From Macrostomum lignano (lineage: Eukaryota): DNA of 64,000 bases. The stretch spans positions 181,922 to 245,921 of the forward strand of contig NIVC01001722.1 of NCBI GenBank assembly GCA_002269645.1, given 5' to 3'. The notes below the pieces were generated by a model. The model made no database searches. It worked only from the letters and a program-made list of their open reading frames with translations, and had not been told where the DNA came from. Of the stretch, positions 18,441 to 63,490 are shown piece after piece; position 1 is the stretch's first letter, and every line of letters begins with the position of its first letter. The translations under genes were made by a program, and so were the position numbers.

Positions 18441-18757
18441 CTAGGCAGCCCTTCCAGGCTACCCCTTTCATGGCAACCACTTCCAGGCTATCTCCTACTT
18501 TGCCCCTGCGTACTGTCTCCATTATGTTCGAAATTGAGAAGATTGTTTCGCTTCGGTATTATTTAAAAATATAATGCATCATTATTTACTTCAGACGCTT
18601 CACTCTCATCATTTCAGGTGCGTACATGCGAGCCAGCTAATGCTGACGCCGAACTTTGTATTCGGCTTTCCAACGAGGAAAAGTGCGTTTATGAAAGCCA
18701 ATAGGGATTTGGGATGCCAGAAAAGATATTCTATTTTGCTAGGATCCGATAAATGCT

Positions 18758-19117
18758 GCCGCTTCGGCTGCAGTGACCACCGGCTCAAGCGGAGGACGAT
18801 CGCAGGACTGCTTGCTGCCTGCCGCTTCGGCTGCAGTGACCGCCGGCTCAAGCGGAGGACGATCGCAGGACTGCTTGCTGCCTGCCGCTTCGGCTGCAGT
18901 GACCGCCGGCTCAAGCGGAGGACGATCGCAGGACTGCTTGCTGCCTGCCGCTTCGGCTGCAGTGACCGCCGGCTCAAGCGGAGGACGATCGCAGGACTGC
19001 TTGCTGCCTGCCGCTTCGGCTGCAGTGACCGCCGGCTCAAGCGGAGGACGATCGCAGGACTGTTTGCTGCCTGCCGCTTCGGCTGCAGTGACCACTGGCT
19101 CAAGCGGAGGACGATCG
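18758..19117. repeat. 63-bp tandem repeat (~6 copies) in the left arm only
   Basis: GCCGCTTCGGCTGCAGTGACCGCCGGCTCAAGCGGAGGACGATCGCAGGACTGCTTGCTGCCT repeated; the right arm has one partial unit. Confidence 0.9.
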
Positions 19118-33520: not shown

Positions 33521-34381
33521 TTCTCATGCTTTGTCTAAACTAGGATTGAGAGATTTTTTAATCCTTCGGGTGACTTTAAGAAGGGGGTGACTTTGAGCCA
33601 ATCCAAAGAGGCGAAACCGGCTCCACCAATCCGGGCCGGGCTCGATTGTCAGACACCCCTTCCCTCCAGCCAGCCCTAGGGATGGGTTTTTATTCAATCG
33701 TAAACAAGGCCTGGCCCACCCAGCAAACAGCAGCTCTCCCCGCCGCCAGACAGCCGCCTAAACTTATATTGGTCTTCACACGGGTTTTAATGCGAGATTA
33801 AGTAGGCCAGGACCCGGCTTTAAGTTCAGACTATTGTTGCGGCTGGACTGAAGAGTACTGTATTTTGTAAACAGCTTTATAGACAGCCAGATAGCAACGG
33901 CTGGCAATGTAATCTGGGTCTTATGCCAACTATCTTCGCTTTAATTAAATCAAAGCTTGAATTTAAACTGAAATTCCTGTCCAGCCCCTGTCTGTGAGTC
34001 TATAGTAGGGAATAAAAATACCGGACTTTGCTGAAACCCGGAATTTTGCCAATACCAGTATTAAATACCGGTTGGGAAGGCAAAGTTCTTGTAAGGATTA
34101 GCCTTTAGTTTTTTCTAAAAAAAAAAAAATAAAAACCTGTAACGGGACTTTTTCCTTTTGTCAAATTTGTTCAAAATTTATTCATTAGGTTTAAACTTTA
34201 AATTACAATTTTTACTTTTATTGTTTTCTTGCTTGCTTTGTTTAACTTGTGCTGTACAGAGTTTTACGTTTTACATAAGACAAATGGGCAGCGGTGGTAA
34301 ACACTAATTTGGGGGATTTTTGTAAAAAAACGATACCCCACTTTGCGAGACCGAGAGACCGATCCCGCCCAGCGCTATTAA

Positions 34382-44000: not shown

Positions 44001-47000
44001 AGAGAGTGAAGATGAAGAAGTCCTCATTTTGGCTTTAAGCAGTTACAAAAAATTGCAAATACAAGCACAATGCAGCCCTTCTTGCCAATCCTAGTTGGAA
44101 ACAGGGATAAAATATACGACTAGAATTGGTCCCACGGTTGGCACACAGGAGAAGGAAAAGCATTGAAATCAAAATTACACTTAGGCGAAATTTAGTCCGA
44201 ATCTGCTTCCCAAAGTCTCTGAAAATCTCGCACATTCGACCGGCTTTTGGTAGCCCTGCGAAAAAAACGCATTTAGATGGAAGAGATACAGGCTTTGTTT
44301 CAATCGTTTTTTTTGCGCTTGCATTATTGATTCGAGAAGAGCGGTGGATGGTGTAAAAGATAATAAAGATGCGAAAATGTTACGAAATCGATCTATTGAT
44401 TTAGAGTAGGCTATGCTCAAATAAGTTAGGACAGTTGGATCCTATTCTAGGTCTATTCTCAAAGTAATAAAGGGTCTATTCTCAAAGTAATAAAGGGTCT
44501 ATTCTCAGTGGTAATCAAGGTCTACTCTCTTGATGATGAAGGGTCTATTCTCAGGTGTAATAAAGGTCTACTCTCTGGGTGATGAAGGGTCTATGCTCAA
44601 GGTGACGGAGGTCTATTCCCAAGGTGATAAAGGGTCTAGGCTCAAGGTGACGGAGGTCTATTCCCAAGGTGATGAGGGTCTAGGCTCAAGGTGACGGAGG
44701 TCTATTCCCAAGGTGATGAGGGTCTATTCTCAGGAATAATGAAGGATGGATTCTGGATGGTGATAGGGTGATTTTGCATAGACTAGATTCCAGAATTAAC
44801 TAAAAACTGGCAGATTTGAGCGCAAGGAAATCAGAAAATGCAGAAAATGCGATGTAAGTAATATAAATATTAAACTCGTTTCTTTGGCTTCAGCAAGTGT
44901 TTTTGGTATTTTTGTGCAAAATTTTTTATTGGAATGGAGTTGATAAATGCCAAAATTTGAAACGCAGGCATTGGTAGATTAAAACTATGCTTTCCGAAGA
45001 ATAATATATCCCTTACTAAGCCGCGATATTTGTCGTGCACTTGTCGCTTAAAGTCGCTAAAAATGACGGACAGTCTGCCAGACTTGGGCAGGTCTACAAT
45101 ATAGCGCAGAGTTTTTATGGGCACAAATGCAAGCAAGCTACTGAAAGTAGTACAATTTAGCGGCACTATTGCCTGCTGATTTGGAATGGAAACGTCTGAA
45201 ACAAACAGCTACAGTAGAGCTGGGGCTATCCTATTAACTATAGCGAGAACATAACTCACAAGCTGCTTAAACTTGCATCTGGCCTTCAGAGCAAAATCGG
45301 AAAACATGTACAGAATACGACCGCGACAAGGAATCCCTGAAACACAGACGGAGTCAATAATCTCTGAAAACAGTGCAGAGTATATACTGCTCTTGACCAG
45401 CTGTGCTAGAACGACACCATGCTCGTTGGAAACGGCGCTTTTCTTTGGTTCAAAGAATTATTTCCTGGATTACTAAGCACTAAATAACTTACAGACAGTC
45501 TCATTTTCAAACGACTTGCGGAGCGAAAATTTTGAAATATATACAGCAGCCTACACGAGGTGGGGATTCCTTCGGATGGAGGGCGGCGACCGCGATTATT
45601 TTTTTATATCGAGATTTATATGTGCAGAGATAAGAAAGTCGCAAGTGCTTTGTGACCCGGCAGTAGTAGACTATTACTAGCAGTAGGTAGTCTCGGGTTT
45701 AACTTAAAAAGACAGACTCACGCTAATCCGATATTTGGCCCGAATTTTGGTGCCAAAATTGGAGTGCAAATAGTTAATCCGACTGTCCTTAGGGAGGTCT
45801 GCAATCGATGCCAGTAAAATCAATAAAATCAATCACGCTTCGGTAGGAGTAAAGAGCGAGGGCCAAGGAAGGAAAACATCGCAAGCTGCTGAGGCGCTAA
45901 GAAATTTGAAAGATGCCTACTTAAACTTAGTAGTATATATGAAATTGCACGTATTTATCAATCTTACAAAGCTTCTAAACCGGAAGCGCATTTTCCGGCG
46001 CAAATCGATAAATAGGAAGATAGTGCGCGATGCGTAGGGCAGCTCTGAAATCTAGTGTTTTATGGTGCTGCTTTGGGGCCGGAATCTGCCGCTAAGGTAG
46101 ACAGGCCTAATTGCCTACTGAAAACGTCGCTAGAGATCAATTTACGGAGTTCAGACAGACGAAGCACTGAACAGGTGATTTTCGTTTATAAGTTTATTAA
46201 CTTCGATCTAAACTACAGATACTAGAATAACTAGATGGACCACTCAGCACATTTGCGTGTAAGCTACTTGCAGTTCAGTATAAAGTTATACAGAAGCATT
46301 TTAATGTATTTTTCAAGACAAGGCTCATTTATTTTCTATGAAACACTAAAACCTACCCCAAGCTGCCAAGTACATTTCAGTGGGGTGTTGGCCAATGTAC
46401 AATACGACTGAACCAATTAGCAAGTTGTTTACGTCTGCAAGCTTTGTTTGTTTGTTTGGCTTCTAAACTTATCAAAGTCATTTGAGCTTATGTTTTCTTC
46501 TTTGCTACTGAACTGGAAGTAGAAAGCTGTTTTACTAAATAAATATTCACAAGTGGCCCCATCTAGTTATTTTAGTATTTTGTGCACTAAACAGAGTAAT
46601 GATCTTGATTAGACCTCAATACAGAGTTCCATTGCATCGAGATTCACCCCTAGAATCCTAAGCATCCCTTGACAGGAACGGATCCCGAGACTTCTACCCT
46701 CACAACCAAGCTAATAGCTTGCTAAAACAAAGAAAAACAAGAGAGCCACAACACCAAAAAACCATGACAGCTGCTCATCCTGTCTTACTGTCTCTCTGTA
46801 CTTGGCCCTAAGCGCGCTGCGTATGTGACAAAACACCCTGTCAGGCCGGGATTTGTACGGCAAATCTGTAAGCATTAAATATTTTGTTAAATAATAATTC
46901 CTAGCCTCTAATCAGCATTTAGCCGGAACCAAATTAGACGAAATGGATTAGAAACGTCACAAGAGCACCTATTGATTAAATTGAACAGAAGAGACCGGAT

Positions 47001-50000
47001 TGACTAAATCAAACCAACTTGGGTCTCACATTAAGTTTCAAAGCGTGCCTAGACTCGAAGCGCATTTTAGAGAATGCTGTTGAGATTCGAAATTCGCTTC
47101 GCAGTCCTGAAATTGAACAGGTCTGAACTATGCCGCTCTGCCTTGTTTCAAATTCACTTTTTCTCATTGCTCTGCACTTGTTGGAAGGAGAAACCGCCAT
47201 TTGCCGGCTAATCCCAACTTACTAGCGCTTTGAAACGCTTTTTAGCGTCGGTTCTAAACGAAATGAAAATCATTGAGATCCGCGCCTCTTTCGGCAGCCC
47301 TGCAAACGCGCGCAATTGTTAAGGCGGGGCATTGAGCTTAAACAAATAGGGGAGATCTGAACTCGGCTTTCACAGGCCTGGAAACGGCTTTGCTTCATTT
47401 CTGTTATCATTTAAACAGAAAATATTTAATACTACTGTAAAAATGCGACATCTACTACTTACGCAAAGTTTAAGTCGCGTTCTGGCGTTTAGTTTAAACG
47501 ACTTGAATATAAAGTTAATTCGGCCATCTTTAGGCAGCCCTGGAAATCGGCCAATCGGTTGTTGCCTCTTGTATATTAACTAAGAAGAGATATTTGCATC
47601 TGGAAACGCTGCATGCAGCTCAGTGGACTCAAGCTCAAGGCGAATAATAGGGAAGCCAGAACTGTTAAAGTTTGCTCCTTCAGTTAAGCAAGAGTATATA
47701 TCCCTATCCGTTGTCCCATCAACACTTACACACAGTTTAAGCCGGGCTCTGGCATTCCGTCTAAAGGACAGAAATATAAAATTTATTCGGCCCTCTTTTG
47801 GCAGACCTAAAAAAACAGATTGCATACGAATAAATTGGATTCTCTTGGCCCAGCAGCTGACATTTTTGTCAGTGTCAATTGACTTGACCGGAGAATCTGG
47901 AAACGCTGCAGCTAAAGTTTAAGCATTCGAATCCATAGCAGCCGGAGTCAGACTGGAGGCGACACGCAATGACACATAACTTGATAAATACTATTAGTCG
48001 CAGCACTTACAGAAGTTTTCAATCTAAGCCGCATATCGCGACGGAATTCAGCGAACATGGCGACAGTACGCCTTAGCAGTTCTACAATTTTTTTTCAATA
48101 ATTTAAATATAATAACAGTGCACAAATATCCTTTTAATACTACTATCCAGCGGCCTAGTTAGTAGCAGATGCACATAGTGTACTATAAAATGTCAGATCT
48201 ATAAAAAAACTGGGTATAAACAGCTGACAAGGGCAGAATAGCGGGACGTTACCAATTGGTGAAGAAAGACAGCAGTCAGAACCCCATTTTTATTGAAAAT
48301 AATAGTTAATTAGGTAATTAATTCATACGCGACTTACAATTGATGGCAGCAATTTTATTGCCATTACTCAACAATTTATTGCTGAATATAATATATAAAA
48401 ACAAATTATAATATTATTTAAAATTGAGTGCATTGCTTCGAAAGGTGAAAGATAGTGTTTTAAAATTATAAATGAAATTATTGCCTCTGAATTATATGTC
48501 ATATTTAGTAAATTTTAACATAGATAATTTAATTTGCTCAAGCCAAAGAACTTGCGACGTTTCCAGACCAAGTAGGCAAGGAGAAAAAGTGACACATTTG
48601 GAATTACACAAGCTGCTTATATAATAATTATTAACAGTGCTTGTACTTGCTATCAGTAGTAGTATGCAGAGAATATTGTTTCAAATGCACAAATTCGCAA
48701 GCAAGATATTCAACTAGTTAGTAGGCTTAAGGGAGGCGACCAACAAAGAGTTAAATTTATTGATTTTTTGGTGCACCAATATCTCAGCTTTGCATCCCTG
48801 TCAACTTAATAAGCACCAATTCTTGTTAAATGCATCATATACACAATATTATCATTCCGTGTTAGACAGAACCTTCGTATTTATCCAGCTATAAAGATAA
48901 TTGATTTTCAATATCAAGCCGCCAATCTCAAGCCTACACTAATATGCTCAATACTACGGTAGCTAACAGCTGCACATTAAGTGCCAAAAAATGCCAAACT
49001 CACTCTGCCAGACGTCGTCCGGCCAGCCTTTGCCTTCGGCCATCTCTTTAGCCTTAGCCATGACCATGGCGGCAACTTGTTGGTTGGGCTCCGCGGAGAA
49101 GCTAAGCGAGAGGACAAGTGGGAATCGAGAGGAGCAGGAATTAGCCAATTTAATGCAGCCATACATTATTAATAAAGAATGGGGACGGCAACTCACTGAA
49201 GGATTTGGGGATGGGGACGGCAACCCACTGAAGGATTTGGGGATGGGGACGGCAACCCACTGAAGGATTTGGGGACGGGGAGGGCAACCCACTGAAGGAT
49301 TTGGGGATGGGGAGGGCAACCCACTGAAGGATTTGGGGATGGGGAGGGCAACCCACTGAAGGATTTGGGGATGGGGAGGGCAACCCACTGAAGGATTTGG
49401 GGACGGGGAGGGCAACCCACTGAAGGATTTGGGGATGGGGAGGGCAACCCACTGAAGGATTTGGGGATGGGGAGGGCAACCCACTGAAGGATTTGGGGAT
49501 GGGGAGGGCAACCCACTGAAGGATTTTGGGGATGGGGACGGCAACCCACTGAAGGATTTTGGGGATGGGGACGGCAACCCACTGAAGGACTCCGCATTCA
49601 AGCTTTACTTACGGCATGCTAAAATCGAATAGGTGAGGTCCGTTTCCTTTAAGCATTTTGTAGGCTCGTCGCATGATAGTCTTGCACTCGGGGGGCACGT
49701 CGCCGCCGCTTCCGCCGCCGCCGCCGCCGCTGCTGCCGAAGCCGCTGACGCCGGCTCCGGAATAATCGGCGGACAAGTCGAGTCGAGGAATTTTGGCATA
49801 GGGGAATCCGGCGCTAAGACTGTCGTCGTTCAGCTCCTCCGTGATGATGCAATCGTCTTCCTCCTCTTCGTCGGCTTCGTAATCGTCGCCTTCCACCTGT
49901 GATTCGACATACATAACGGCTGCGTTTTAGACACAACATTAATGTGCTCGGGCGATCAAATGACCTTGAGTAATAGCAGAGTCAAATGACCTTGAGTGAT

Positions 50001-50944
50001 AGCAGAGTCAAATGACCTTGAGTGATAGCAGAGTCAAATGACCTCGAGTGATAGCAGAGTCAAATGACCTCGAGTGATAGCAGAGTCAAATGACCTTCAG
50101 TGATAGCAGAGTCAAATGACCTTCAGTGATAGCAGAGTCAAATGACCTCGAGTGATAGCAGAGTCAAATGACCTTCAGTGATAGCAGAGTCAAATGACCT
50201 TGAGTGATAGCAGAGTCAAATGACCTCGAGTGATAGCAGAGTCAAATGACCTCGAGTGATAGCAGAGTCAAATGACCTTGAGTGATAGCAGAGTCAAATG
50301 ACCTTGAGTGATAGCAGAGTCAAATGACCTTGAGTGATAGCAGAGTCAAATGACCTTGAGTGATAGCAGAGTCAAATGACCTTCGGTGATAGCAGAGTCA
50401 AATGACCTTCAGTGATAGCAGAGTCAAATGACCTTCGGTGATAGCAGATTAAAATGACCTTCAGTGACGGTGGCAACACAGTTTTAAAACGACTAACCTT
50501 AATGGCGCCAAGCGCCGCGCCCAGCACGCTACTGGCGCCCATGTCGCCAAGTACAGACGCTTTCTCTTCCTTAGTTGAAGCATTGGCGCCGCCAGACAAA
50601 GACGAGGCGGCAGTTGATTCGCGATGCAGCTGCTGATGCTGCGATGGCGGCGGCTGTTGCTGCTGGTGCTGCTGCTCTCCGGACACGCTGGCGACAAGGC
50701 CGGCGGCTTCTAGCTCGGCGAGCCGGTCGCTTCGATCGAATGCCCGACAATACCTGGGCTCCATGGAGTGAACCACGTGAGTGTGCAGATTGCCGATGAT
50801 TTTCAGTGCAGAGAACAGTTCGCGCTCGGCCATGGACTCTACGAGCATTTGCGCGTTAGTGATGGTGGATTCGAACAGGGTGAGAGGCGAGAAACTGTTG
50901 CCAGGCGGCAGCAGGCTCGAGTGCGGGCTGAGTACGTCTGCCAT
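41079..50944 (-). CDS. C14orf93/RTFC-like nuclear protein, paralogue B, with a variable cassette exon
   Basis: Exons 50498-50944, 49613-49896 (CKTIMRRAYKMLKGNGPHLFDFSMP), 49004-49101 (PFSAEPNQQVAAMV...DDVWQ), one cassette from 42734-48081, and 41079-41426 (KLNRRQKSF...RDYTSSDEE...LRVRELAWES...RQLD...RPPP). All junctions are GT-AG and in frame (417 aa by the direct path). The motifs parallel recalled human C14orf93 segments (KLRSRR, EELMSDEED, HLD, SDRLP). Confidence 0.7.
41455..42437. repeat. ~28-30-bp G-rich intronic minisatellite (GGGATTTGGGGATGCTGATGGGAGAAT variants)
   Basis: In the last intron of paralogue B; generates several spurious long ORFs. Confidence 0.9.
43130..44025. repeat. Purine-rich compound minisatellite (GAGTGAACAGAAAGGTGAAGA/GAGTGAACAAGA)
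   Basis: Inserted between cassette exons 44179-44255 and 42979-43055. Confidence 0.9.
44440..44735. repeat. Degenerate tandem repeat (GGGTCTATTCTCAAGGTGAT variants)
   Basis: Intronic, between cassettes 45017-45093 and 44179-44255. Confidence 0.75.
48551..48569 (-). promoter_or_regulatory. Putative RNA docking site for mutually exclusive splicing (pre-mRNA GGUCUGGAAACGUCGCAAG)
   Basis: Lies between the upstream constitutive exon (ends 49004) and the first cassette. It is complementary to motifs at 47896, 47599, 47377, 46949, 46118, 45872, 45633, 45427 and 45187, each 60-94 nt upstream of a cassette acceptor. Confidence 0.75.
49197..49590. repeat. 32-bp intronic minisatellite (CCACTGAAGGATTTGGGGATGGGGAGGGCAAC)n
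   Basis: About 12 copies in the paralogue B intron 49102-49612. Confidence 0.95.
49960..50460. repeat. 26-bp intronic minisatellite (GTCAAATGACCTTGAGTGATAGCAGA)n
   Basis: About 19 copies in paralogue B intron 1. Confidence 0.95.
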
Positions 50945-51004
50945 TCCGGAGCGGCGGGCATGAACGGAACAGTAATGGATGACTTAATTAGTGACGAGTT
51001 CAAG

Positions 51005-51730
51005 TGAACCTGTAAATCCCATAATTCAACCTTTAACTCCCTAAATCAAACCTGTAAATCCCTAAATTGAACCTGTAAATCCCATAATTCAACCTGCAAC
51101 TCCCTAAATCAAACCTGTAAATCTCTAAATCGAAGCTATAAATCCCATAATTCAACCTGCAACTCCCTAAATCAAACCTGTAAATCTCTAAATCGAAGCT
51201 ATAAATCCCATAATTCAACCTGCAACTCCCTAAATCGAACCTGTAAATCCCTAAATCGAACCTGTAAATCCCTAAATCGAACCTGTAAATCCCTAAATTG
51301 AACCTGTAAATCCCTAAATTGAACCTAAAACTCCCTAAATTGAACCCGTAAATCCCTAAATTGAACTTGTAAATCCCTAAATTGAACTTGTAAATCCCTA
51401 AATTGAACCTGTAAATCCCTAAATTGAACTTGTGAATCCCTAAATTGAACTTGTGAATCCCTAAATTGAACCTGTTAATCCCATAATTCAACCTGCAACT
51501 CCCTAAATCGAACCTGTAAATCCCTAAATCGAACCTGTAAATCCCTAAATTGAATTTGTAAATCCCTAAATTGAACCTAAAACTCCCTAAATTGAACCTA
51601 AAACTCCCTAAATTGAACCTGTTAATCCCTAAATTGAAATCCCATAATTCAACCTGCAACTACCATAATCCAGGCTGTAAATACCATAACTGAACCTGTA
51701 AGTCATAATTGAACCTGTAACTACCTGGTA
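51005..51730. repeat. 21-bp minisatellite (AACCTGTAAATCCCTAAATTG)n
   Basis: Directly upstream of the paralogue B ATG. Confidence 0.9.
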
Positions 51731-52691
51731 CCATAATCAGAGCTGTAAATCATAAAATTGTACCCATAAAATCGACTTTATACACCCTGTAACTTTACAA
51801 CTGTGCAATTGTCAAATTCGCTAACCCAAAGCCAAAAATCTATCAAAATGAAACACTGGAAGCAATCCAAATGTGATATGCTGTAAACTATTTGTTGAAC
51901 CCTCTATCAGCTAATACTACCTAAGCTAAGCACTTCTACGGATTGAATTTAATAAACAATAGTTAAAAACACAGTTCTCAACACATTCATTAAAAACAGC
52001 ATGTGATAAGTGGACTTATTGCAAGAATTAGACGAGAATCAATTTTATAAAAAAATGGATAATGATACAAGGTCGGCTAGCAAACAAGACGGAGATGCAA
52101 CCCAAGTCGAACAGACATATCGATTAGCAATTAGATGTCTCTGTATTCAACACAAATAATAAGACACAGTAGTAAAATAATATAGTGATTTGTTGGCAAC
52201 AAACAGATAACTGGGAGCTTGGGACTCGGTCAGCACAGTATCGCACAAAGCTATGTATGCATTGAGTAGATAAGGGATAGCACTGCAAGCTAAATGCCGA
52301 TGTTTGCTAAACTGCATAGAATACGAGCTTATATAACAGTAGCTTATATAGTGTATACTAGATATTATTTGCTAATTACACAAAGGCAATTTTATTTTAG
52401 TTATCATCAATATACAACAAAGCAGCTGATAAAATGATTAATTACGGAACCGCCTACTCAGAAGATTAGTTTTTATAGTATAGTATGCTACTAAAAGAGA
52501 ATATTATAAACAAATCTACAGACAGGAGAATAATTGCCACTAACGATGATGGGATAAGTTTTCGACAGGGAATGTCTGCTGCACATCTAACCTACATTAT
52601 TTTATAATGCTATAGCTGGGGATTATAGGGGTATAGCTGCAAAAATTTACACCTGTTTACTAACAGTAATATTATTATTATTACACATTTA

Positions 52692-55600
52692 TTAAATGTT
52701 AGTTTTGAAATCCTCCGCCAGCGCCCAGTCCGGACAGTCTGTAGGTGGCGGCCGGCCGCTAACGCTGCTCGAATCTCTGATTGTCCGGCGCAGCTGTTGC
52801 GACTGCTTCTGATTGGCGCAGGTTTCTAAGAATGCCTCGTCCAATTGGCGCTTCATGCCGGCCATCTCGGCGGACTCCCAGGCTAGCGAGCGGACTCGGA
52901 GAGCTCCGCTGCCGCCGGCTCCTCCACCGCCGCCGCCGCCTCCGAGTTCGTCGCTGGACAAATCGGCCGCGGTGGCATCCTCATCGGAGGAGGTGTAATC
53001 TCTGGACAGCAGGACGCGGTACTTGTCAAACTGATCGGTTGACAGGCTGCTAGCTAACAGTTCGAAGCTCTTCTGCCGGCGGGCTAGTTTCTATGGGGAA
53101 ACAGGCGAGGGCCAGAGGGGACGGGGGTCAAGTGGGATTTTAGTACATTTCATTCTGGTGCATCAAGCTATACAATATATATTACTATTAAACTTTTTTA
53201 TAGCATCATACTTACCTGCCCAAGCTGCCCTAAGGTAAAAGTATTATAAATTCAGTATTATTAACATATACTCGTACAAACTTTCTGTAAGCAGGAGAAA
53301 CAGAATATGAAGGCAGCACTAGAATGAGAGAAGATACTTTGCCAGGTAAGAAATGTCCCCAGTGCATGAAACTGTCTCACGTTCATGAGACATTGGTACT
53401 ATTATTTATGCGCTTATAAGGGCGGTTCTAAATGTGTGTATGGGGCGATTTCTAATGTGCTTATAGGGAGATTCTTAATGCACTTATAGGACGATTCTTA
53501 ATGCACTTATAGGGCGATTCTTAATGCACTTATAGGGGCGATTCTTAATGCACTTATAGGGAGATTCTTGATGCACTTATAGGGCGATTCTTAATGCACT
53601 TATAGGGAGATTCTTAACGCACTTATAGGGCGATTCTTAATGCACTTATAGGACGATTCTTAATGCACTTATAGGGAGATTCTTGATGCACTTATAGGGC
53701 GATTCTTAATGCACTTATAGGGGCGATTCTTAATGCGCTTATGGGACGATTTTCACGGGCTTATAGGACGATTCTGAACGGGCTTATAGGACGATTCATA
53801 ATGCGCTTATAGGACGATTCTCAACGGGCTTATAGGGTGATTCTTAATGCGCTTATAGGACGATTCTCAACGGGCTTATAGGACGATTCATAATGCGCTT
53901 ATAGGGCGATTCTTAATGCGCTTATAGGACGATTCTCAATGGGCTTATAGGGCGATTCTTAATGAGCTTCTAGGGCACATCTTAGGGCGGTGTTCGCGCG
54001 GAGTTAGAGCAGAACCAACCCAACGGCCAAGACCTAACAACCTACTCTTTGGCGATTTCTTTGTCTGCGCTTTTCGGCCGCGAATTTCTCTCGCATTTTC
54101 AGCGCACTAGAGCTGAGATCCTGGGCAAACAGGTACAGTTCGTCTGAAAACAGCGGTTTAAAAACAACAAGAAGTCAAAGATTGAGTTTAACTGAAAATT
54201 CTAAAAAAGCTTTAAGCCAGTGCCAGAAACACGTTTGAATGGCGCTAATCTGGGCGAGCATTTCGGTGACAAAACATGGAAATTTAAAACACCACAAAAA
54301 CAATCTGTCAGTCTATCAATTAATCAATGAAATCATTATAAATAAACATTCTCGGACCTTTCTTCGACTGCGCAGTTTGCTCATAGCGAGCTTGTTGCTG
54401 CTGCGCCTGTTCTGCACAGCCCGCTGCATGTTGCAATAAACGTCAAGAAATAAGCCTAAAATAGTCATAAATTAGTATGCAAGTTGTTTTATTTATGCCC
54501 AAACTACTGACAAGTAGTGCACTTGGGGATCGCAATATTTATCGAATGGTGTCGTGTCGCATTCATAGCTGAGGCCAGTGTGAAAAAAGCGGAAATAAAA
54601 ACAATGGCATTAAAATTAATACTTGCTGACACCATTGAAACTCGCGGTACTATTAATATACCTTCTGTTTGTAGCGAATCCTCCTTATCCGCATTTTATT
54701 CTTATGCAGATCGTCTTTAACTAGGCCGTACTGCTCCCGGGCGGCGGCTAAAAAGATCGCATTTATTAGCAAAAACCTTTAGCGAGTACTACTATAAGTA
54801 GTTAATCAGCATGTAAGAGCACTTGCGATCTTGTGACCTTGAACCAGCGACATAGTGATAATGATGGAGAATACAATGAATAAAACTTTAATTATTTTCC
54901 AACAAAGAAACGTGTGGTGTTAACAACTAGAATCAATTAATTAATGATTAACTGTTAAATAACGGAGTTAATTAGATGATTAATTGCATAAAAAGGCTAG
55001 CAAAAGTGCCGGATCTAACATTAACGACCCATGGCATTTGCTAACATATTTAACATTAACGGCACCATTTTGTGATAATGTAGACATAGATAATGGAAAC
55101 TCCTATAAAATGGCTTGACGGTCACCAAATGCAAGGAATAGGCCCATCGTGTACAACGGCAGCTTATCTGGCAGCTTGACATTTTCATAACTATTTAGTA
55201 AGCGAGAATTATATGATTTTATAAAGAAGAATTTGCTAACTTACTCCACCACACGTCCTGCGGTATGCCAGGCAGTGGCAGCTGTCTCTGCGCGTGAGAC
55301 ATCACCTGTTCTGCTACGCGCTGATTCACCGAGTCTGTAAAACTAAAATGGGCAGAAGGGTGGCCGGAACTAATAAGGTGTATGCAGATAGGCAATTAGC
55401 TTTGTATGGCACTTGGTAGCTAGGCACATAGGCAGTAAAAAAACTTTCTTATTGGGCTTGACCTAAGAGGCCTGGACCTTAAGGTTATTGCTAATGAGGT
55501 TAGAGGGTTATTGCTAATGAGATTAGAGGGTTATTGCTATTGAGGTTAGAGGGTTATTGCTAATGAGATTAGAGGGTTATTGCTAATGAGATTAGAGGGT

Positions 55601-57311
55601 TATTGCTAATGAGGTTAGAGGGTTATTGCTAATGAGATTAGAGGGTTATTGCTAATGAGATTAGAGGGTTATTGCTATTGAGGTTAGAGGGTTATTGCTA
55701 ATGAGATTAGAGGGTTATTGCTAATGAGGTTAGAGGGTTATTGCTAATGAGATTAGAGGGTTATTGCTATTGAGGTTAGAGGGTTATTGCTAATGAGATT
55801 AGAGGGTTATTGCTAATGAGATTAGAGGGTTATTGCTAATGAGGTTAGAGGGTTATTGCTAATGAGATTAGAGGGTTATTGCTAATGAGATTAGAGGGTT
55901 ATTGCTATTGAGGTTAGAGGGTTATTGCTAATGAGATTAGAGGGTTATTGCTAATGAGGTTAGAGGGTTATTGCTAATGAGATTAGAGGGTTATTGCTAT
56001 TGAGGTTAGAGGGTTATTGCTAATGAGATTAGAGGGTTATTGCTAATGAGGTTAGAGGGTTATTGCTAATGAGATTAGAGGGTTATTGCTAATGAGGTTA
56101 GAGGGTTATTGCTATTGAGTTTAGAGGGTTATTGCTATTGAGTTTAGAGGGTTATTGCTAATGAGGTTAGAGGGTTATTGCTAATGAGATTAGAGGGTTA
56201 TTGCTAATGAGGTTAGAGGGTTATTGCTAATGAGATTAGAGGGTTATTGCTAATGAGGTTAGAGGGTTATTGCTAATGAGATTAGAGGGTTATTGCTAAT
56301 GAGGTTAGAGGGCCATTGTTAATGATCTTAGAGGGCCATTGTTAATGAGCTTAGAGGGCCATTGTTAATGAGCTTAGAGGGCCATTGTTAATGATCTTAG
56401 AGGGCCATTGTTAATGAGCTTAGAGGGTCATTGTTAATGAGCTTAGAGGGCCATTGTTAATGAGCTTAGAGGGCAGTGCGACACAAATAACTTAAAACGG
56501 GCGTTTCGTAATGAGTTTAAACAATAAGATTAGTGTGCGATTATCGAACTCACGGCATAGAAAAGTTGAACAGATGCGGCCCGTTTCCTTTTAACTCTCT
56601 ATACGAGTTGCGCAGCGCCGATCTGCACTCGCTGTTGACGCCGGTCACAGGCAAAGCTGCTGCCCCAGCTACTGACAGCTCCTGGCTGGTGCCAGCCGCT
56701 GCAGTTTCTTGACGAGTTCGCTTCCTACTAGGAGACGCTGCAACAGCGGCCGAGGCGGCGGCAACGCCGGGCGGCGGAGCAAAAGCGGCAGCTGAGCCAG
56801 CAAGAGAACCGTCCTCCTCCATGATCAGGCAATCGTCAATAGAGTCCTCATCCTCAATCAATAGCTGCTCCTCTTTGACGCTGCCGCTGCCAAATAGTGA
56901 GATGCTGCGGCCGCCAGCTGATTGGGCGGCGTCGAACTCAGTTTTTGGCCGAGTCGAGGCGCCATTGGCTGTGGCCTGGCTGACAGTGCCAGCGGCGGCT
57001 ACTGACGATGGCAGCGGAGATGACGCAGCCGAAGATGTTGTGGCGGCGGCGGCGGCGCCAGACAGGAGGCAGGCTCCGTGAGCTTCGCTCCGAGCAAATG
57101 CTCGCTCGCATCTGGGCTCAATAACGCCAACAATGTGCGTGTGAAGGCCGCTGGCAATGCGGAGAGCGTGCAGCAGCTCTCTATCAGCCATGGATTCAAT
57201 CAGCATCTGAGCGTTAGTAATTGTGCACTCGAATAGTGTTAATGGAGAAAAATTGTTTGAATTGTTTGGGGCACCAGCGTTGCCGCTCAATTGCGCTACT
57301 TCGCAAGCCAT
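52692..57311 (-). CDS. C14orf93/RTFC-like nuclear protein, paralogue A, with at least 3 alternative exons
   Basis: Exons 56554-57311 (FSPLTLFECTITNAQMLIESM...GPHLFNFSMP), 55245-55342 (98 nt, same length and phase as the B exon), one of 54662-54747 / 54358-54455 / 54046-54143, and 52692-53090 (KLARRQKSF...RDYTSSDED...LRVRSLAWES...RQLD). It is clearly paralogous to gene B. Confidence 0.72.
53440..53985. repeat. ~22-bp intronic minisatellite (GGGCGATTCTTAATGCACTTATA)n
   Basis: In the last intron of paralogue A. Confidence 0.9.
55480..56472. repeat. 23-bp intronic minisatellite (GAGGGTTATTGCTAATGAGATTA)n
   Basis: About 43 copies in paralogue A intron 1. Confidence 0.95.
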
Positions 57312-58968
57312 TGCTGAGTTTGTTGCAGAAGCCTGGTAGAGAGCAGCTGTCAAGTGTTATGATTGGCTTTAGCGGGTTTCTATAGACAGAGGAGCTGGAA
57401 TTGGCAGCAATGGTTAACCAAAAACTCAATCAGTTATGTCATTGTCATATACATGCATACATGCACAACCCCCAAAATTCGGTCGGCCGTGTGACTTAGT
57501 TTTAACAAAATGCGACGTAGTTTTTGGCCAAAAATGCGACTTTGGGTAAACTGCGTTAAACTCTGCTTGGCCAAATTGCCGTCTTGTGCTTTTGTGGGGG
57601 CTGGTCACTAATTGCAGATTGTAATGCTCTTGGAAATAGCAATTTTACTAATCTATAAGTATTCTATGTAATGTATAAATACACTATATTGTATGCAATG
57701 TTATATTACTAAAAAACTCAACTAATTACAAAACTTGGAAATTGAGTATCCTAGAAAATGGTTGAGTTACTCAACAAAAAATTGTCAAGTCAGATACTCA
57801 ACAGGCACAATAATAAAGTACTATAGTTAATAAGCTAAATATCTGCTAGATAATATTAACTTTAAAGAAACTAACATTAACAATAACCTATAATGTTATA
57901 AATATATAGCAGAATTCAAAACTTAATATAGATAATAATATATAAACCTTTACCTTAGCACCATAGTTTAGGTGACATATATGCCAAGATTTCTTGGCAT
58001 ACAACAAGGTCTTAGGTCTTATATTTTAGCATACATAAGGGTATATCCCAGCATATATGACAGTAGATACATGCCAAATAATAAATTTTTGTATTGGTGC
58101 ACAAACCTAGTATACAAACAAGGTTTCATCAATTTTTCTAGCATTAAACCTGGCATTTACTAATATATGATTTGAACTATGGCCTCAGTAGCCACACTCT
58201 GGATCATATAGTATATGCCCAAAAATTTGGACATGCATTAGCCTTGCATGCCAAAAGTAGGCATGCACAATTGGCATATATCATTCTTACAAAAATCATG
58301 TATGCACACCTAGCATATACTTTATAAAATCAACACAGAATAGTTATTGTGAAATGGAAAAAAAGATGAAAAAAGTTCATTTTAAGTATAATTTTCAAGC
58401 TTTACAGGTTTTTAAGCTTGTAATAAAGCATTGATTTTCCACTATGAATAATATTGCTGAAAATATTGCTGAAATTGCTGAAAAAGCAGAAAAATAAAAT
58501 AAATTATTTGCCATAAAGGTTCCATGGTATTATGCAATTCAAAAATGGAGTACTTATAGGCATGGCGGCCATGTCTATAATATTTGAGCTTATAGGCATA
58601 GCTATTATCATCAATATAAAATGCATGTTCTATAGGGCTCTCTTATAAGCAAATGGTGGCTTAGTAGATATGTCAATTGCCTTGTGATTGGGTGTAGGAA
58701 GGTTTAAATCCCAAGAGGTTGGTGTTTTTTAATTTAAAATTTTTTTAGCAAATAGATTTTTTTCCATCTATAACTTTTTAAGTTTTTTATTAAAATAAAA
58801 AATAAATTAAATTAAATTTTTTTAATAAGAATTCTTTGCTAAATCCTAGTGCAGCCACAAATATATATGTAGCCCATAGTCAGGAAGGTGGTCTTTGCCA
58901 TTAAAAATTCCAGCACAATACAAGGGGTCCTTGGCACACAATCATGGTGCACACTAAGGTCCCTGGCA

Positions 58969-59688
58969 CCCTATTGGAATAAGTTGACAAAACGCGGACA
59001 ACCGTCCGTCACATTTTCGGATTCTACTGGTGTCACGTTGCGCGACAGTGGTTTCAAGTAGTGTGTCGCGTTGCGTGACACTGTGGAAACCTGGTGTCGT
59101 CATGCGTCGCAAATGCGACACAACAATGTGACAACTTGGCGGCTGGCATTGTCATGTGTCGCATTGCGGCCTGGATCTGTAGCCAAAACCTCACAAACTG
59201 TGTTTCATTATAATAATATGTTCATGGTTGTTTCTTGGTATTTAAATGTTTCAAACATGTTTGATAATAACTATTTCTTGATTTGTTCTTTTTCATTTTG
59301 ACTGTAAAGTAACTAATACTTCAAATATATTTTTTAGAAATGTTACTTGTTAGTTACAATGTGTGTGCTGTTTTTCTAAGTGTTGTACCTTTGTTGTTTC
59401 ACTGTTTTTTTATTTCATTTCTTTTTCCACAAAATTGAAAGGAATACTCTTGTCCCACACCCCATTGTCTTGGTGTTGGGGTATTGGGAGTGAACGGCAG
59501 AATGGGAATTGTCAATTGCAATATGGCTGCTATGGCGTCCTCTACCCCCAGTCATTTGGTCAACAGACACCAATGTTGCGTCGCCGCCCCCTAGTCAACA
59601 AAATTTGGTGTCGCATTGCGCTTTTAAGGGCACAATTTTGGCACCTGTGTTGCGCGTCTATGGGTTTTTGAAAATTATTCCAATAGGG
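58969..59688. mobile_element. Possible MITE with 14-bp TIR
   Basis: CCCTATTGGAATAA / TTATTCCAATAGGG; no TSD found; a 33-bp direct repeat lies at ~58933 and ~59702. Confidence 0.35.
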
Positions 59689-61867
59689 CCCTAGTGCATG
59701 CGGCGCACAATCATGGCGCACACTGAGGTCCCTGACAAATACAGTGCTATGCACAACTTCAAATCAGAATAGAATCTTTATTAGCATAAAACTGGCATAG
59801 CATATTGAGTCTGCATGAATTCTAAGAATTTTGTAAATTTGTCATAAAATATGTAATTTACATAAAATACATAAAATAAAGGCATAGACTTCTTGCACAA
59901 ATGGCGCAAAGATGGTACAAAAATGGTGCATAAACAGCACACAGATTGTCCTAAAAATTTATTCTGGCACACATTGTATCACCTTCTTGACTATGGTGTA
60001 TAGCTATATCTATAAGTATTTAAACTTATAGATTATTATAAATTTTATATTATAAGAAGTTTGCCACATTTTTGTTTATGCTGTTTAGTTATTGCTAGAT
60101 TTTCATTTATTCTCAAGTTGCTTAATTACACATTTAGTCAGGCTATATATTGTTTAACTCATGACAAAGTGCAAGCAATATGAATCAAAATTTTTTTGTA
60201 GCTACATATATAATTGCAGCCACCCTTTAAGATTTAATGTTACTCTTCCCACTGTGTCTTTAAGTGTGAACCTATTCACTATTAACAATATAGCCTGGCT
60301 GCTATGCAAGTTTCATTGACACAATAGTTGTGTCTAATTATAACTAGGTCTATAGGTCTATTTATAGACATGGCAACCATGTCTATAATGCAGAAACTTA
60401 TATACACAGTAGCCATGTCTATAAATATGGACCTAGTCACTATTAGAGACACAGCTGCCATGTTTATAAGTTTCTGCATTCTAGACACAGCCACTTGGTC
60501 TATAGTCTTAGTGTGGCAATTCAAAAGGTCATTCATTGTCATAATATAAAAAGGTCATTTATTGTTGCAACATTGGCATAGTTTTGAGAATGGATAGCCT
60601 ATGCATTCCATTTTGGCATGCATTTATATTTATTCAATTTTTGTTTGGGTGTGCACCTAGTGTGATCTGGACTATGATCTAATTTGGTATATAGGGCCTA
60701 TTAGATGTAAAATTATAATCTTAAATAGAAAACTAAGGCATTAGCTAGTATTACTATTAGTTACAAAAATCAAAATTGAATAAAAACTATAAATATTTTA
60801 ACGTCACTGGTACAGGAATAAAAAGTCTCTCTCATCAATTCTCTTCATCCCAATCTCTATATCTCTTTATCTCAATCTCTGATAATACTATATCTTCTTT
60901 ACCAAACTATCGAGTTTTGCTTTCTAGGATAGATTTAGAATGGTAGGGCCTAACCAATAACATTGGGCCTAGTTTTGGTAATGATAGTTAATTATAGTCA
61001 AGGTAATCAATTTACATGAGGCCTATTACTTTAGGCCCCTACCCTAGCCTATGTATGAAAGTGTATTGAAGTTGATAAATCTTTGATTGAATCTTATTTA
61101 CAAAACGAAAAGGCGTTATTGTACTAAATTATTTCTTAATTTTAATACTCCTTTCAATAAAGAACAGTCGTATTATACTTTTACACGTTTCTGTAGATAA
61201 CATCAAGCACACTTAATAAACCATACAATCATACACACCTTTACCATAAAGTTTTCTTTATTCGTAGAATATAATTTTTGTGCATTTGAAACCTACTCGT
61301 CTAATTGGACAATGCACCTTGCAGAAATCAGACGTATAACAAAATAAGAGTAGTAAATATTTTTTTATCAGGATTAGGAATGATATAGATTTCGTTTAAC
61401 GTTGAAAAAATAATAAAGTGTAGAGAATAATAACTAAAAATATTTTAAATATCTTTTTGCACATTTATAGTTAAAATGATATACAAGTGTCCGATACACT
61501 ACTGTAAATGGACCGTACCGTACAGTTTATTATTTTTTATTTATAGCTATCAATGAATTTTAGTGATTTATTAACTGTTTAATGCGTTTTTCCTTTACTG
61601 GGGAGTTTTAAATAGTACTTACTCAGTGTCTACTTTTTACGCAAGATAAGCGCAAGAGTAATACTAATACTTTATTACTGCGTTTACGCGACCGATATCA
61701 CGATATGTTGTGTAGTATGTTTAATGTAGCATAAATTTGTATGTTAAATTTTTAATTTTTAAGGATGGCAAGTAACTCCACAAATAATATATTAATGTTT
61801 AATGATATGAATAGCGATTGGAATACTTTTGATATTTATGAAACAAAAAGAATTTAAAAATTTCAGT

Positions 61868-61949
61868 CGACGAGGATGGGATTCGAACCCACGCGGGGAA
61901 ACCCCAATGGATTAGCAGTCCATCGCCATAACCACTCGGCCACCTCGTC
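61868..61949 (-). tRNA. tRNA-Ser(GCU), 82 nt
   Basis: GACGAGGTGGCCGAGTGGTTATGGCGATGGACTGCTAATCCATTGGGGTTTCCCCGCGTGGGTTCGAATCCCATCCTCGTCG: intact cloverleaf, long variable arm, A and B boxes and a downstream T run. Confidence 0.97.
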
Positions 61950-62225
61950 TAACTCCATGGGCTTAATTTTTTAAAATATAACTTAAACGTAAAATATTTT
62001 TTTCTGCTGCGCAAGCCGGGACGAAGGATGCATAAAATACGATTTGATAGCTTTTGCTATTTTGACAAATGGCACGTGGGAGCTCCAGCAAAAAGGCAAG
62101 GCTGAAGCAAAATCATTTAGAGCTGAAAAATTCTGTCACATGATCACATCACACTCAGTCTCTTCTCTATATCTGGCCTGGCGTCACATTCCCGATCTGA
62201 ACTGACCCTGCCCCTGCCCTGCTCG

Positions 62226-62638
62226 TCAAGCCTGCTCTTCGTTGCTGGATTCCCCAACCTTCTCCTTATCAGTCCGACTATTTGGTAAATCTTCTAGTGT
62301 TAATTCTTCAGCTGTATTGGTAGGCTGCTCAGATGCCGATGCCGGCTTATTGGGATCACAGAAGGCGCAGACACCGCTGGTGCCCGCGTCGCCGATCGAC
62401 TCAATGTCGCCGTTGCCAGCTTCGCCTTCCCGCCGAGTGTCTGGAACTGACGAGTCGGGTCTAGGCGACTGATTAGTCAGCTTAGCAACCAACTGATTGT
62501 CGCCGTTGGATTGCGCAATTTGGGTGCCCTTCTCCATGCCCACCTGTACGGCATTGATTAGCCCGGAGACGAACACCATACCCAGGAATATCCACACGGC
62601 CAAGCTGAACCTGTACACGTCTGATGAGTACGTCTGAC
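62226..62638 (-). CDS. Last coding exon of a two-pore-domain (K2P/KCNK) potassium channel
   Basis: Acceptor ctcacag, then phase-1 GQTYSSDVYRFSLAVWIFLGMVFVSGLINAVQ, matching the K2P TM4 signature YRxxxxxWIxxG, followed by a low-complexity tail. Upstream exons lie beyond the window. Confidence 0.6.
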
Positions 62639-62756
62639 CTGTGAGTGAGCAATAGCGAGTATTAACACCAGTTTTGAGTTTAGATGTTTGGACTAAAAAT
62701 GTGAGACTGGACTGTTGGTGAACAAAAATACAAGCTTTACCTGGATCTGTTTTTAC

Positions 62757-63490
62757 GGCTGCTATCTATGATTGGCTGCTATCTTTGATTGGCTGCTATC
62801 TTTGATTGGCTGCTATCTATGATTGGCTGCTATCTATGATTGGCTGCTATCTTTGATTGGCTGCTATCTGCGATTGGCTGCTATCTTTGATTGGCTGCTA
62901 TCTATGACTGGCTGCTATCTTTGATTGGCTGCTATCTATGATTGGCTGCTATCTTTGATTGGCTGCTATCTATGATTGGCTGCTATCTTTGATTGGCTGC
63001 TATCTATGATTGGCTGCTATCTTTGATTGGCTGCTATCTTTAATAGGCTGCTATCTGCGATTGGCTGCTATCTTTGATTGGCTGCTATCTTTGATTGGCT
63101 GCTATCTATGATTGGCTGCTATCTTTGGTTGGCTGCTATCTATGATTGGCTGCTATCTTTGATAGGCTGCTATCTGCGATTGGCTGCTATCTTTGATTGG
63201 CTGCTATCTATGATTGGCTGCTATCTTTGATTGGCTGCTATCTTTAATAGGCTGCTATCTGCGATTGGCTGCTATCTTTGATTGGCTGCTATCTTTGATT
63301 GGCTGCTATCTATGATTGGCTGCTATCTTTGATTGGCTGCTATCTATGATTGGCTGCTATCTTTGATAGGCTGCTATCTGCGATTGGCTGCTATCTTTGA
63401 TTGGCTGCTATCTATGATTGGCTGCTATCTGTTATTGGCTGCTATCTTTGATTAGCTGCTATCTGTGATTAGCAGCTATCTGTGACTGCC
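62757..63490. repeat. 17-bp intronic minisatellite (GCTGCTATCTTTGATTG)n
   Basis: About 43 copies upstream of the K2P exon. Confidence 0.95.

What the first reader, a model, noticed from the sequence alone, without database searches (positions are those of the whole stretch)
54046..54747. Paralogue A has its own set of alternative exons at the same position
Seen in sequence: three phase 1 to 0 exons lie between the constitutive exons 55245-55342 and 52692-53090. They are 54662-54747 (TAAREQYGLVKDDLHKNKMRIRRIRYKQK), 54358-54455 (SLFLDVYCNMQRAVQNRRSSNKLAMSKLRSRRK) and 54046-54143 (NELYLFAQDLSSSALKMREKFAAEKRRQRNRQR); the last two are both 98 nt. Each restores the frame alone. KLRSRR matches the recalled C14orf93 motif. 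Inference: variable splicing of this helix predates or recurred after the gene duplication, and paralogue B expanded it massively. An internal CAG at 54424-54425 would also allow an in-frame 86+66 nt join. I found no convincing docking site in paralogue A.
Basis: partly seen in the sequence, partly recalled or inferred. Interest (0 to 1): 0.78.

Follow-up and report, generated by a model that had tools for sequence, protein, structure and literature searches.

The report
Three alternative exons with RNA docking site
An uncharacterised flatworm (Macrostomum lignano) gene carries three either/or exons, inherited from before a gene duplication, together with a conserved intron element that can pair with a site in front of each exon, as in insect Dscam; RNA proof exists for only one of the three.

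Summary
The window is Macrostomum lignano contig NIVC01001722.1. Each alone restores the frame. Skipping, or including two or three, gives a premature stop.

Splice signals plus open frame are no better than chance (31 candidates against 34 simulated). Homology is what makes the exons real. Paralogue C has cassettes of the same lengths, order and phase, and each is used by a different deposited gene model. Among about 128,000 six-frame windows, c1 finds a1 at rank 1 and c2 finds a2 at rank 2, in exact exon register.

All deposited models of gene A use only a3, so a1 and a2 have no RNA evidence in A.

A 17-nt element lies at intron position +108 after exon 2 in both A and C and is the only alignable intron sequence between them. 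Complementary sites lie within 150 nt upstream of all six cassettes (0 of 160 shuffled cores match).

The C14orf93 link rests only on a weak transitive match.

Verdict: an ancestral three-way mutually exclusive exon cluster, probably controlled by competing RNA pairings. It is a new member of a known kind.

The parts
56554..57311 (-). Exon 1 of gene A (ATG at 57311-57309; donor ATGCC|gtgagt; ends in phase 2)
   Evidence: identical to the N-terminus of P0001/P0009/P0010.
55245..55342 (-). Constitutive exon 2 (98 nt; ...PFTDSVNQRVAEQVMSHAQRQLPLPGIPQDVWW; ends in phase 1)
   Evidence: The acceptor at 55344-55343 is the one used in the deposited proteins. A second AG 8 nt downstream (55336-55335) would break the frame.
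55119..55146 (-). Candidate docking site UGGGCCUAUUCCUUGCAUUUGGUGACCG. The core TCCTTGCATTTGGTGAC (55137-55121) starts at intron position +108.
   Evidence: It is the only intronic nucleotide match between A and paralogue C. The 17-mer is identical and lies at the same offset, +108, in both. It is the best of 331 17-mers of intron 1 for pairing upstream of the three cassettes (z -3.2).
55025..55046 (-). Orphan selector-like sequence Sx (UGUUAGCAAAUGCCAUGGGUCG); no cassette follows it
   Evidence: Duplex -21.1 kcal/mol with the docking region. The 190 nt downstream are closed in all frames.
54816..54839 (-). Candidate selector S1 (AGGUCACAAGAUCGCAAGUGCUCU), 69 nt upstream of a1
   Evidence: Duplex -21.2 kcal/mol with the docking region; shuffle control.
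54662..54747 (-). Cassette a1 (86 nt; T|AAREQYGLVKDDLHKNKMRIRRIRYKQK); weak donor gtatat
   Evidence: It is the best match (rank 1 of 127,834) to cassette c1 of paralogue C, in exact exon register. Ungapped nt identity to c1 is 57%, against a background of 25 +/- 4%. No transcript evidence in A.
54508..54534 (-). Candidate selector S2 (UGCGAUCCCCAAGUGCACUACUUGUCA), 53 nt upstream of a2
   Evidence: Duplex -17.9 kcal/mol; shuffle control.
54358..54455 (-). Cassette a2 (98 nt; S|LFLDVYCNMQRAVQNRRSSNKLAMSKLRSRRK); weak donor gtccga
   Evidence: Rank 2 of 127,810 for c2, in exact register. 48% nt identity to c2. No transcript evidence in A.
54240..54271 (-). Candidate selector S3 (UGUCACCGAAAUGCUCGCCCAG...), 97 nt upstream of a3; the strongest in A
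   Evidence: Duplex -23.7 kcal/mol; it is the top hit of the 17-mer scan of A.
54046..54143 (-). Cassette a3 (98 nt; N|ELYLFAQDLSSSALKMREKFAAEKRRQRNRQR); the only cassette in deposited models of A; best splice sites
   Evidence: P0001, P0009, P0010 and P0002 all contain it. The GenBank annotation is derived from RNA-seq.
52692..53090 (-). Last exon (KLARRQKSFELL... to stop TAA), phase 0
   Evidence: identical to the deposited proteins except for a poly-Gly length difference.

Best explanation
Gene A (BOX15_Mlig000338g3, an uncharacterised Macrostomum lignano protein) carries an ancestral cluster of three mutually exclusive exons. They encode alternative versions of a 29- or 33-residue stretch of one long alpha-helix, variable at the front and strongly basic at the end. 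Exclusivity is enforced in two ways. (1) Frame: every cassette is 2 mod 3, so only single inclusion gives the full protein (shown). Other products carry premature stops and would be removed by nonsense-mediated decay or give truncated protein (inferred). [quoted passage not shown] That pairing would bring the chosen cassette to the exon 2 donor and activate it, as in Dscam exon 6 (pairing potential shown by computation; function inferred). a3 has the best splice sites and the strongest selector, and it is the default form seen in all annotated transcripts. a1 and a2 have weak donors and are probably minor or conditional forms (inferred).
For: Anatomy and frame.

Identity of the locus: (window 48034-63000 is identical to L004, contig NIVC01001722.1).

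Paralogue C (L001) has cassettes of 86, 98 and 98 nt in the same order and phase. P0004 uses c1, P0013 uses c2 and P0012 uses c3. The GenBank models come from RNA-seq.

One-to-one homology:
- Global alignment z is 6.1-6.6 for a1/c1 and a2/c2.
- Rank 1 and rank 2 of about 128,000 six-frame windows, in exact register.
- Nt identity is 57%, 48% and 36-38%, against 25 +/- 4% for random intron windows. Apart from the 17-mer, the introns of A and C do not align.

Across three genomic copies of C, introns vary at 106 of 1663 columns. c1+c2+c3 vary at 0 of 282, and docking site plus selectors at 0 of 77.

Docking site and selectors:
- The 17-mer is identical at offset +108 in A and C.
- In C, the three best duplex sites of 4954 windows are the ones 90-125 nt upstream of c2, c3 and c1.
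- In A, sites lie upstream of a1, a2 and a3.
- 0 of 160 shuffled cores reach the observed summed or weakest-of-three energy in A or in C.
- An unbiased scan of A intron 1 peaks on the conserved core.

The same position is variable in deposited isoforms of other family members: B, F and G.

Helix.
Against: There is no RNA evidence that a1 or a2 is ever included in A; all four deposited models use a3.

The protein database held no a1- or a2-containing product.

The three A copies are too alike to show selection on a1 and a2: 2 of 184 variable columns against 22 of 1020 in introns.

a3/c3 homology is weak (z 2.5).

The docking core does not vary, so there is no compensatory covariation.

In C, a GC-rich stretch scores better than the core in the unbiased scan.

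A fourth complementary site, Sx, has no cassette.

Duplex energies ignore competing local structure and bound proteins.

c2 is supported only by a UniProt/WormBase ParaSite model.
Confidence: 0.6

Rival explanations
1. a1 and a2 are relics. The ancestral cluster was functional and still is in paralogue C, but in gene A only a3 is spliced, so it is in effect a constitutive exon and a1/a2 are silent pseudo-exons.
For: All deposited A models use a3 only. a1 and a2 have weak donors (gtatat, gtccga) and failed a simple splice-site filter. No significant excess conservation of a1/a2 among the three A copies.
Against: The A and C introns have diverged beyond alignment. Yet a1 keeps 57% nt identity to c1, the same as constitutive exon 2 (56%), and a2 keeps 48%. 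Lengths, phases, AG/GT sites and open frames are intact. The one a1 difference among copies is synonymous and the one in a2 is Leu/Val. Each still has a selector complementary to the docking core. The annotation pipeline removed minor isoforms.
Confidence: 0.22
2. a1 and a2 are regulatory 'poison' exons. They would be included in addition to a3, or partially through the internal AG, to shift the frame and lower the output of the gene, not to make alternative proteins.
For: Any double inclusion gives a premature stop. Frame-breaking cassette-skipped transcripts exist in this family: L005 from a related species and P0020 in paralogue G.
Against: Poison exons need no conserved open frame. Here amino-acid similarity to c1 and c2 is kept in the coding register. 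In paralogue C, c3 is joined directly to the last exon in a full-length model (P0012); the c1 and c2 models (P0004, P0013) end at or just after the cassette.
Confidence: 0.08
3. The conserved 17-mer is a protein-binding splicing element (or has another function), not an RNA docking site, and the complementarity upstream of the cassettes is incidental. The cluster would then be kept exclusive by reading frame and splice-site strength alone.
For: No covariation is available, because the core is identical in A and C. In C another stretch gives lower summed energy. An orphan complement, Sx, exists.
Against: Six of six cassettes in two paralogues have a complement within 150 nt upstream. 0 of 160 shuffled cores match this, and in C the three best of 4954 sites are exactly those three. 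Paralogue B shows the same pattern with its own element.
Confidence: 0.3
4. The three segments are chance open AG...GT stretches in an intron.
For: The count of such stretches equals the chance expectation.
Against: a3 is in deposited transcript-derived proteins. a1 and a2 are the top-ranked matches in the whole window to paralogous exons, in exact register.
Confidence: 0.02

Closest known systems
Dscam1 exon 6 cluster of insects (upstream docking site with a selector before each variable exon; Graveley model, as summarised in PMC6071210)
   Same: A single conserved element sits in the intron after the upstream constitutive exon. A complementary sequence lies shortly upstream of every variable exon, and all of them compete for the same nucleotides. 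Cassettes are of equal or similar length and encode alternative versions of one structural segment.
   Different: There are 3 cassettes (at least 13 in neighbour B), not 48. The phylum is a flatworm. The protein is an unrelated, uncharacterised, probably intracellular helical protein, not an Ig receptor. Cassette length is 2 mod 3, so frame also enforces exclusivity. No experimental or covariation evidence yet. No known repressor.
14-3-3zeta, Mhc, MRP and srp mutually exclusive exon clusters of insects (competing RNA pairings)
   Same: Small clusters (2-8 exons) that arose by tandem exon duplication and are controlled by competing intronic pairings.
   Different: In those genes the docking site lies downstream of the cluster (PMC6071210). 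Here it is upstream, as in Dscam exon 6.
Frame-enforced mutually exclusive exons coupled to nonsense-mediated decay
   Same: Cassettes are not a multiple of 3, so double inclusion or skipping gives a premature stop.
   Different: Decay itself was not tested. After skipping, the stop falls in the last exon, where exon-junction-dependent decay would not act.
C14orf93 / Pfam DUF4616 (PF15394)
   Same: The C-terminal module of the family (acidic Ser-rich stretch, RVRxLxWES...K..LD, S.RPPP..AP.WA) aligns with P0190 (hhalign 96.6%). P0190 in turn weakly matches DUF4616 positions 387-474 of 524.
   Different: No member of the family reaches DUF4616 even at E up to 10. The P0190 match is below Pfam's cut-off (21 against 27 bits). 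The cassette region lies outside the matched part. Named homologues are all 'uncharacterized protein' of echinoderms, hemichordates, amphioxus and a bivalve.

Membership tests
Mutually exclusive exon cluster | Two or more adjacent candidate exons between the same two constitutive exons, each with usable 3' and 5' splice sites | tested here: met
   a1, a2 and a3 all have YAG acceptors and GT donors between exon 2 and the last exon. The a1 and a2 donors are weak.
Mutually exclusive exon cluster | Same entry and exit phase, and similar length | tested here: met
   86, 98 and 98 nt; all phase 1 to 0.
Mutually exclusive exon cluster | Cassettes homologous to each other (origin by tandem exon duplication) | tested here: inconclusive
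   Within A: a1/a2 z about 3, a3 against the others z 1-2. Homology is clear only cassette by cassette to paralogue C.
Mutually exclusive exon cluster | Exactly one cassette per mature mRNA (RNA evidence) | not testable with these tools
   Only a3-containing products are deposited for A. For paralogue C, three models each carry one different cassette. No read-level data could be accessed.
Mutually exclusive exon cluster | Other combinations are non-productive | tested here: met
   Skipping, all pairs and the triple give premature stops.
Docking site / selector competing RNA structures (Dscam exon 6 type) | One conserved intronic element next to the flanking constitutive exon | tested here: met
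   17-nt identity at intron position +108 in both A and C, in introns that otherwise do not align. Invariant in three C copies.
Docking site / selector competing RNA structures (Dscam exon 6 type) | A complementary selector upstream of every variable exon, all overlapping the same docking nucleotides | tested here: met
   Six of six cassettes in A and C. 0 of 160 shuffled cores match. Computational pairing only.
Docking site / selector competing RNA structures (Dscam exon 6 type) | Compensatory covariation between docking site and selectors across species | tested here: inconclusive
   The core is identical in A and C. The only variant (55136 C>T in copy L002) lies at an unpaired edge position. 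No other species' genomes were reachable.
Docking site / selector competing RNA structures (Dscam exon 6 type) | Disrupting and restoring the pairing changes exon choice | not testable with these tools
   Needs minigenes or transgenic worms.
C14orf93 / DUF4616 (PF15394) | Match to the Pfam model at or above its gathering score | tested here: not met
   No hit for A isoforms or 20 other family members. Only P0190, a distant relative, gives 21 bits against a cut-off of 27.

The most novel reading that the evidence does not exclude
A docking-site/selector RNA switch operates in a flatworm and is shared by a whole paralogous gene family. The same helix-coding position holds 2 to at least 13 mutually exclusive cassettes: 3 in A and C, at least 13 in B, at least 2 in F and G. 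The docking element of A and C has been kept at exactly the same intron offset since their duplication, and B has a diverged version. That would be a natural series showing how such switches arise and expand, outside arthropods and vertebrates, in an animal for which transgenesis exists.
Probability: 0.45. Interest if true: 0.75.

Novelty: new member of a known kind. Interest (0 to 1): 0.6.

Why it matters
Mutually exclusive exon clusters controlled by competing RNA pairings are well documented mainly in insect genes and a few vertebrate genes. I found no paper that links them to flatworms.

Here one gene family offers small (3) and large (at least 13) clusters side by side. It also has a docking element conserved between paralogues whose introns are otherwise unalignable.

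This makes two questions directly testable: how docking/selector systems originate with tandem exon duplication (the model of PMC6071210), and how they scale up. M. lignano can be made transgenic (PMC5730564), so disruption and compensatory-rescue experiments are feasible.

It also flags an uncharacterised protein family, conserved across several animal phyla, whose one variable helix is evidently under diversifying use.

Tried and rejected
(1) Conservation among the three genomic copies of A. My first count suggested strong exon conservation, but it was inflated by misaligned ends. The corrected three-way alignment shows that the copies are too similar: introns 2.2% variable, a1+a2 1.1%. The test is uninformative and one search's numbers should be ignored.

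(2) Splice-signal plus open-frame enumeration. It does not separate the cassettes from chance.

(3) Local tblastn of the C cassettes against the window. c1 finds a1 first (E 0.018), but c2 is dominated by a chance hit. An ungapped full-length scan was more informative.

(4) Protein database searches for a1- or a2-containing products, including a junction-spanning profile. None was found. The only new item was a cassette-skipped transcript from a related species.

(6) The 17-mer was not found in paralogues E, F, G (up to 4 mismatches) or in B (up to 3 mismatches).

(7) No intact cassette follows the orphan selector Sx.

(8) Rfam: no known RNA family in 52000-58000.

(9) Pfam: no significant family; C14orf93/DUF4616 is not reached directly.

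(10) Literature: no paper on these gene identifiers, or on mutually exclusive exons in Macrostomum.
Full report
WHAT THE SEQUENCE IS. Window positions 48034-63000 are identical to contig NIVC01001722.1 of the Macrostomum lignano assembly Mlig_3_7 (GCA_002269645.1). It is annotated there as BOX15_Mlig000338g3 (P0009). Two further genomic copies, 95-98% identical, sit on other contigs: L003, and L002 = BOX15_Mlig001175g1 (P0001). The GenBank gene models of this assembly were built from RNA-seq and a de novo transcriptome. Minor isoforms were filtered out (TACO --isoform-frac 0.75; PMC5730564).

THE OBSERVATION.
- The gene runs from the ATG at 57311. Exon 1 ends at 56554.
- Exon 2 is 55342-55245.
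- One cassette follows: a1 54747-54662 (86 nt), a2 54455-54358 (98 nt) or a3 54143-54046 (98 nt).
- The last exon is 53090-52692.
- Every cassette is 2 mod 3 and enters in phase 1, so each alone gives an open 447- or 451-codon CDS.
- Skipping, any two cassettes, or all three give a premature stop.
- The 86+66 nt join through the AG at 54425-54424 is open as stated, but nothing supports it.

These features alone are not beyond chance. The 2.1-kb interval holds 31 open, frame-compatible AG...GT segments, and simulations give 33.8 +/- 12.9. A simple splice-site filter kept a3 but not a1 or a2, whose donors (gtatat, gtccga) are weak.

WHY THE CASSETTES ARE NEVERTHELESS REAL. A paralogue about 41% identical in protein (paralogue C; L001, contig NIVC01002737.1) has, at the same position, three cassettes of the same lengths, order and phases:
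- c1 10032-10117, 86 nt
- c2 12419-12516, 98 nt
- c3 14061-14158, 98 nt

Three deposited proteins each use a different one: P0004 = c1 and P0012 = c3 (GenBank, transcript-derived), and P0013 = c2 (UniProt only).

The cassettes match one to one.
- a1/c1 and a2/c2 are reciprocal best matches (global alignment z 6.1-6.6).
- In an ungapped scan of every six-frame window of the 64-kb window, c1 finds a1 at rank 1 of 127,834 and c2 finds a2 at rank 2 of 127,810. Both matches run end to end on the predicted exon boundaries.
- Ungapped nucleotide identity is 57% (a1/c1), 48% (a2/c2) and 36-38% (a3/c3). Random intron windows give 25 +/- 4%, and constitutive exon 2 gives 56%.
- With one exception, the introns of A and C do not align at all.

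So the three-cassette cluster predates the A/C duplication. a1 and a2 have kept coding-register similarity, length, phase and splice dinucleotides over a divergence that erased neutral sequence.

In the three genomic copies of C, introns vary at 106 of 1663 aligned columns, but c1+c2+c3 vary at 0 of 282. The three copies of A are too similar for the same test: introns 22 of 1020, a1+a2 2 of 184. My earlier figures were an artefact of misaligned ends and should be ignored.

WHAT IS NOT SHOWN. Every deposited product of A (P0001, P0002, P0009, P0010) contains a3. P0009, the model on this very contig, reads through the a3 donor into the intron (…RQR-VGC-stop). No a1- or a2-containing product exists in the protein collection, even when it is searched with a junction-spanning profile. 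Use of a1 and a2 in A therefore remains an inference.

The one extra transcript found is a Logan RNA contig from a related species (L005, SRR30276804). In it, exon 2 is joined directly to the last exon, which breaks the frame. A similar skipped form exists for paralogue G (P0020).

A DOCKING SITE AFTER ALL. The single intronic match between A and C is a perfect 17-mer, TCCTTGCATTTGGTGAC. It lies at window 55137-55121 and at L001 9659-9675. In both genes it starts at position +108 of the intron that follows exon 2.

I scanned the downstream introns with this core using RNAduplex.
- In C, the three best sites of 4954 windows lie 90-125 nt upstream of c2, c3 and c1.
- In A, the best six include 54271-54240 (upstream of a3, the strongest), 54839-54816 (upstream of a1) and 54534-54508 (upstream of a2).
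- With 160 shuffled versions of the core, none reached the observed summed energy, or the weakest-of-three energy, in either gene. None placed even two of its top three C sites upstream of cassettes.
- An unbiased scan of all 17-mers of A intron 1 peaks on the conserved element (z -3.2). In C a GC-rich stretch scores better, so this control works only for A.
- The docking site and the three selectors are invariant in the three C copies (0 of 77 columns; about 5 expected).
- All selectors pair with overlapping parts of the same core, so only one can pair at a time.

This is the architecture of the Dscam exon 6 cluster (an upstream docking site and a selector before each variable exon; PMC6071210).

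The limits are these:
- There is no covariation, because the core does not vary.
- The energies ignore competing structure.
- A fourth complementary site, Sx (55046-55025), has no cassette behind it.

CONTEXT IN THE FAMILY.
- Paralogue B, just downstream in the window, has at least 13 cassettes of 77 nt between 47806 and 42734.
- An unbiased scan of B's first cluster intron peaks at 48570-48548 (median duplex -19.4 kcal/mol over the 13 cassettes). This peak is preceded by TCTCCTTGCCTACTTGG, which resembles the A/C core.
- Deposited isoforms also show alternative cassettes at the same position in F (P0016, P0017) and G (P0008, P0027).
- C is followed by a B-like gene, so the A-B pair was duplicated as a block.
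- a3 resembles one B cassette (45569-45493; LYLFAQDLSSSALKMR against LYIFQNFRSASRLKMR, z 7.5).

THE PROTEIN. No Pfam family is hit. A profile search finds 388 relatives. Those I looked up by name include 'uncharacterized' proteins of sea stars, a sea cucumber, acorn worms, amphioxus and a mussel; others carry no name. They share the C-terminal half.

The link to C14orf93 (DUF4616) is only transitive. P0190 aligns with the family's C-terminal module (hhalign 96.6%), and it gives a sub-threshold match to DUF4616 positions 387-474 (21 bits against a cut-off of 27). The cassette region is outside that match.

An AlphaFold2 model has mean pLDDT 56, and 70-90 over residues 222-350. It puts the end of exon 2, the whole cassette and the start of the last exon into one helix, residues 281-333. 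The cassettes thus swap the middle of a long helix whose C-terminal part is very basic. What it binds is unknown.

MECHANISM AND VERDICT. Shown:
- the anatomy;
- the frame logic;
- the ancestry of the cluster;
- transcript-derived use of a3, and of c1 and c3 in the paralogue;
- the conserved element and its pairing potential.

Inferred: that a1 and a2 are still spliced in A, that the pairings choose the cassette, and that aberrant products are degraded.

I put about 0.6 on the full model, about 0.2 on 'a1 and a2 are silent relics in A', and little on the rest. The kind of system is known. The gene family, the phylum and the paralogue series are new.

Noticed in passing
window 42734-47806 (-) and 48548-48590 (-): Paralogue B has at least 13 cassettes of 77 nt with the motif LPK.GR...F.F....K.R. 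An unbiased scan puts its likely docking site at 48570-48548 (TGGTCTGGAAACGTCGCAAGT). This is preceded by TCTCCTTGCCTACTTGG, which resembles the A/C docking core.
   Followed up: partly
window 55025-55046 (-): An orphan selector-like sequence is complementary to the docking site, about 75 nt downstream of it, and no cassette follows. It may be a remnant of a lost exon or a local hairpin that masks the docking site.
   Followed up: partly
window 45493-45569 (-) vs 54046-54143 (-): Cassette a3 resembles one B cassette far more than any other (z 7.5; 9 of 16 identical residues). This hints that the B array grew from an a3-like exon, or that sequence was exchanged between the neighbouring genes.
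   Followed up: partly
window 53401-53976 and 55483-56473: Introns of gene A hold 23-nt-period tandem repeats (25 and 43 copies). The introns of paralogue C also hold long tandem arrays. The repeat in the last intron may explain why the model on this contig stops after a3.
   Followed up: no
window 55335-55344 (-): Exon 2 has two acceptor AGs 8 nt apart (ttttag|ttttacag|). Only the upstream one keeps the frame, and it is the one used in the deposited proteins.
   Followed up: no
L005 1-1211 (Logan SRR30276804): A transcript contig of the A orthologue from a related species joins exon 2 directly to the last exon (cassette skipped, frame broken). P0020 shows the same for paralogue G.
   Followed up: partly
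L002 5697-11065: The copy of gene A on contig NIVC01000127.1 carries about 5.4 kb of extra sequence in the last intron, relative to the window.
   Followed up: no
L001 16665-18325; contigs of L006/L007: Family genes lie in tandem pairs: A-B in the window, and C followed by a B-like gene. E also appears to have a neighbour: P0025 and P0168 map to contigs of the same lengths (130,144 and 189,352 bp) as those carrying E. The A-B pair was therefore duplicated as a block.
   Followed up: partly
window 16700-19250 (+) vs 24280-25900 (-); 34250-35000 vs 35400-36110: Large inverted duplications occur. One carries long proline-rich tandem repeats (PGYPSQATLPRLPF) that are open in several frames.
   Followed up: no
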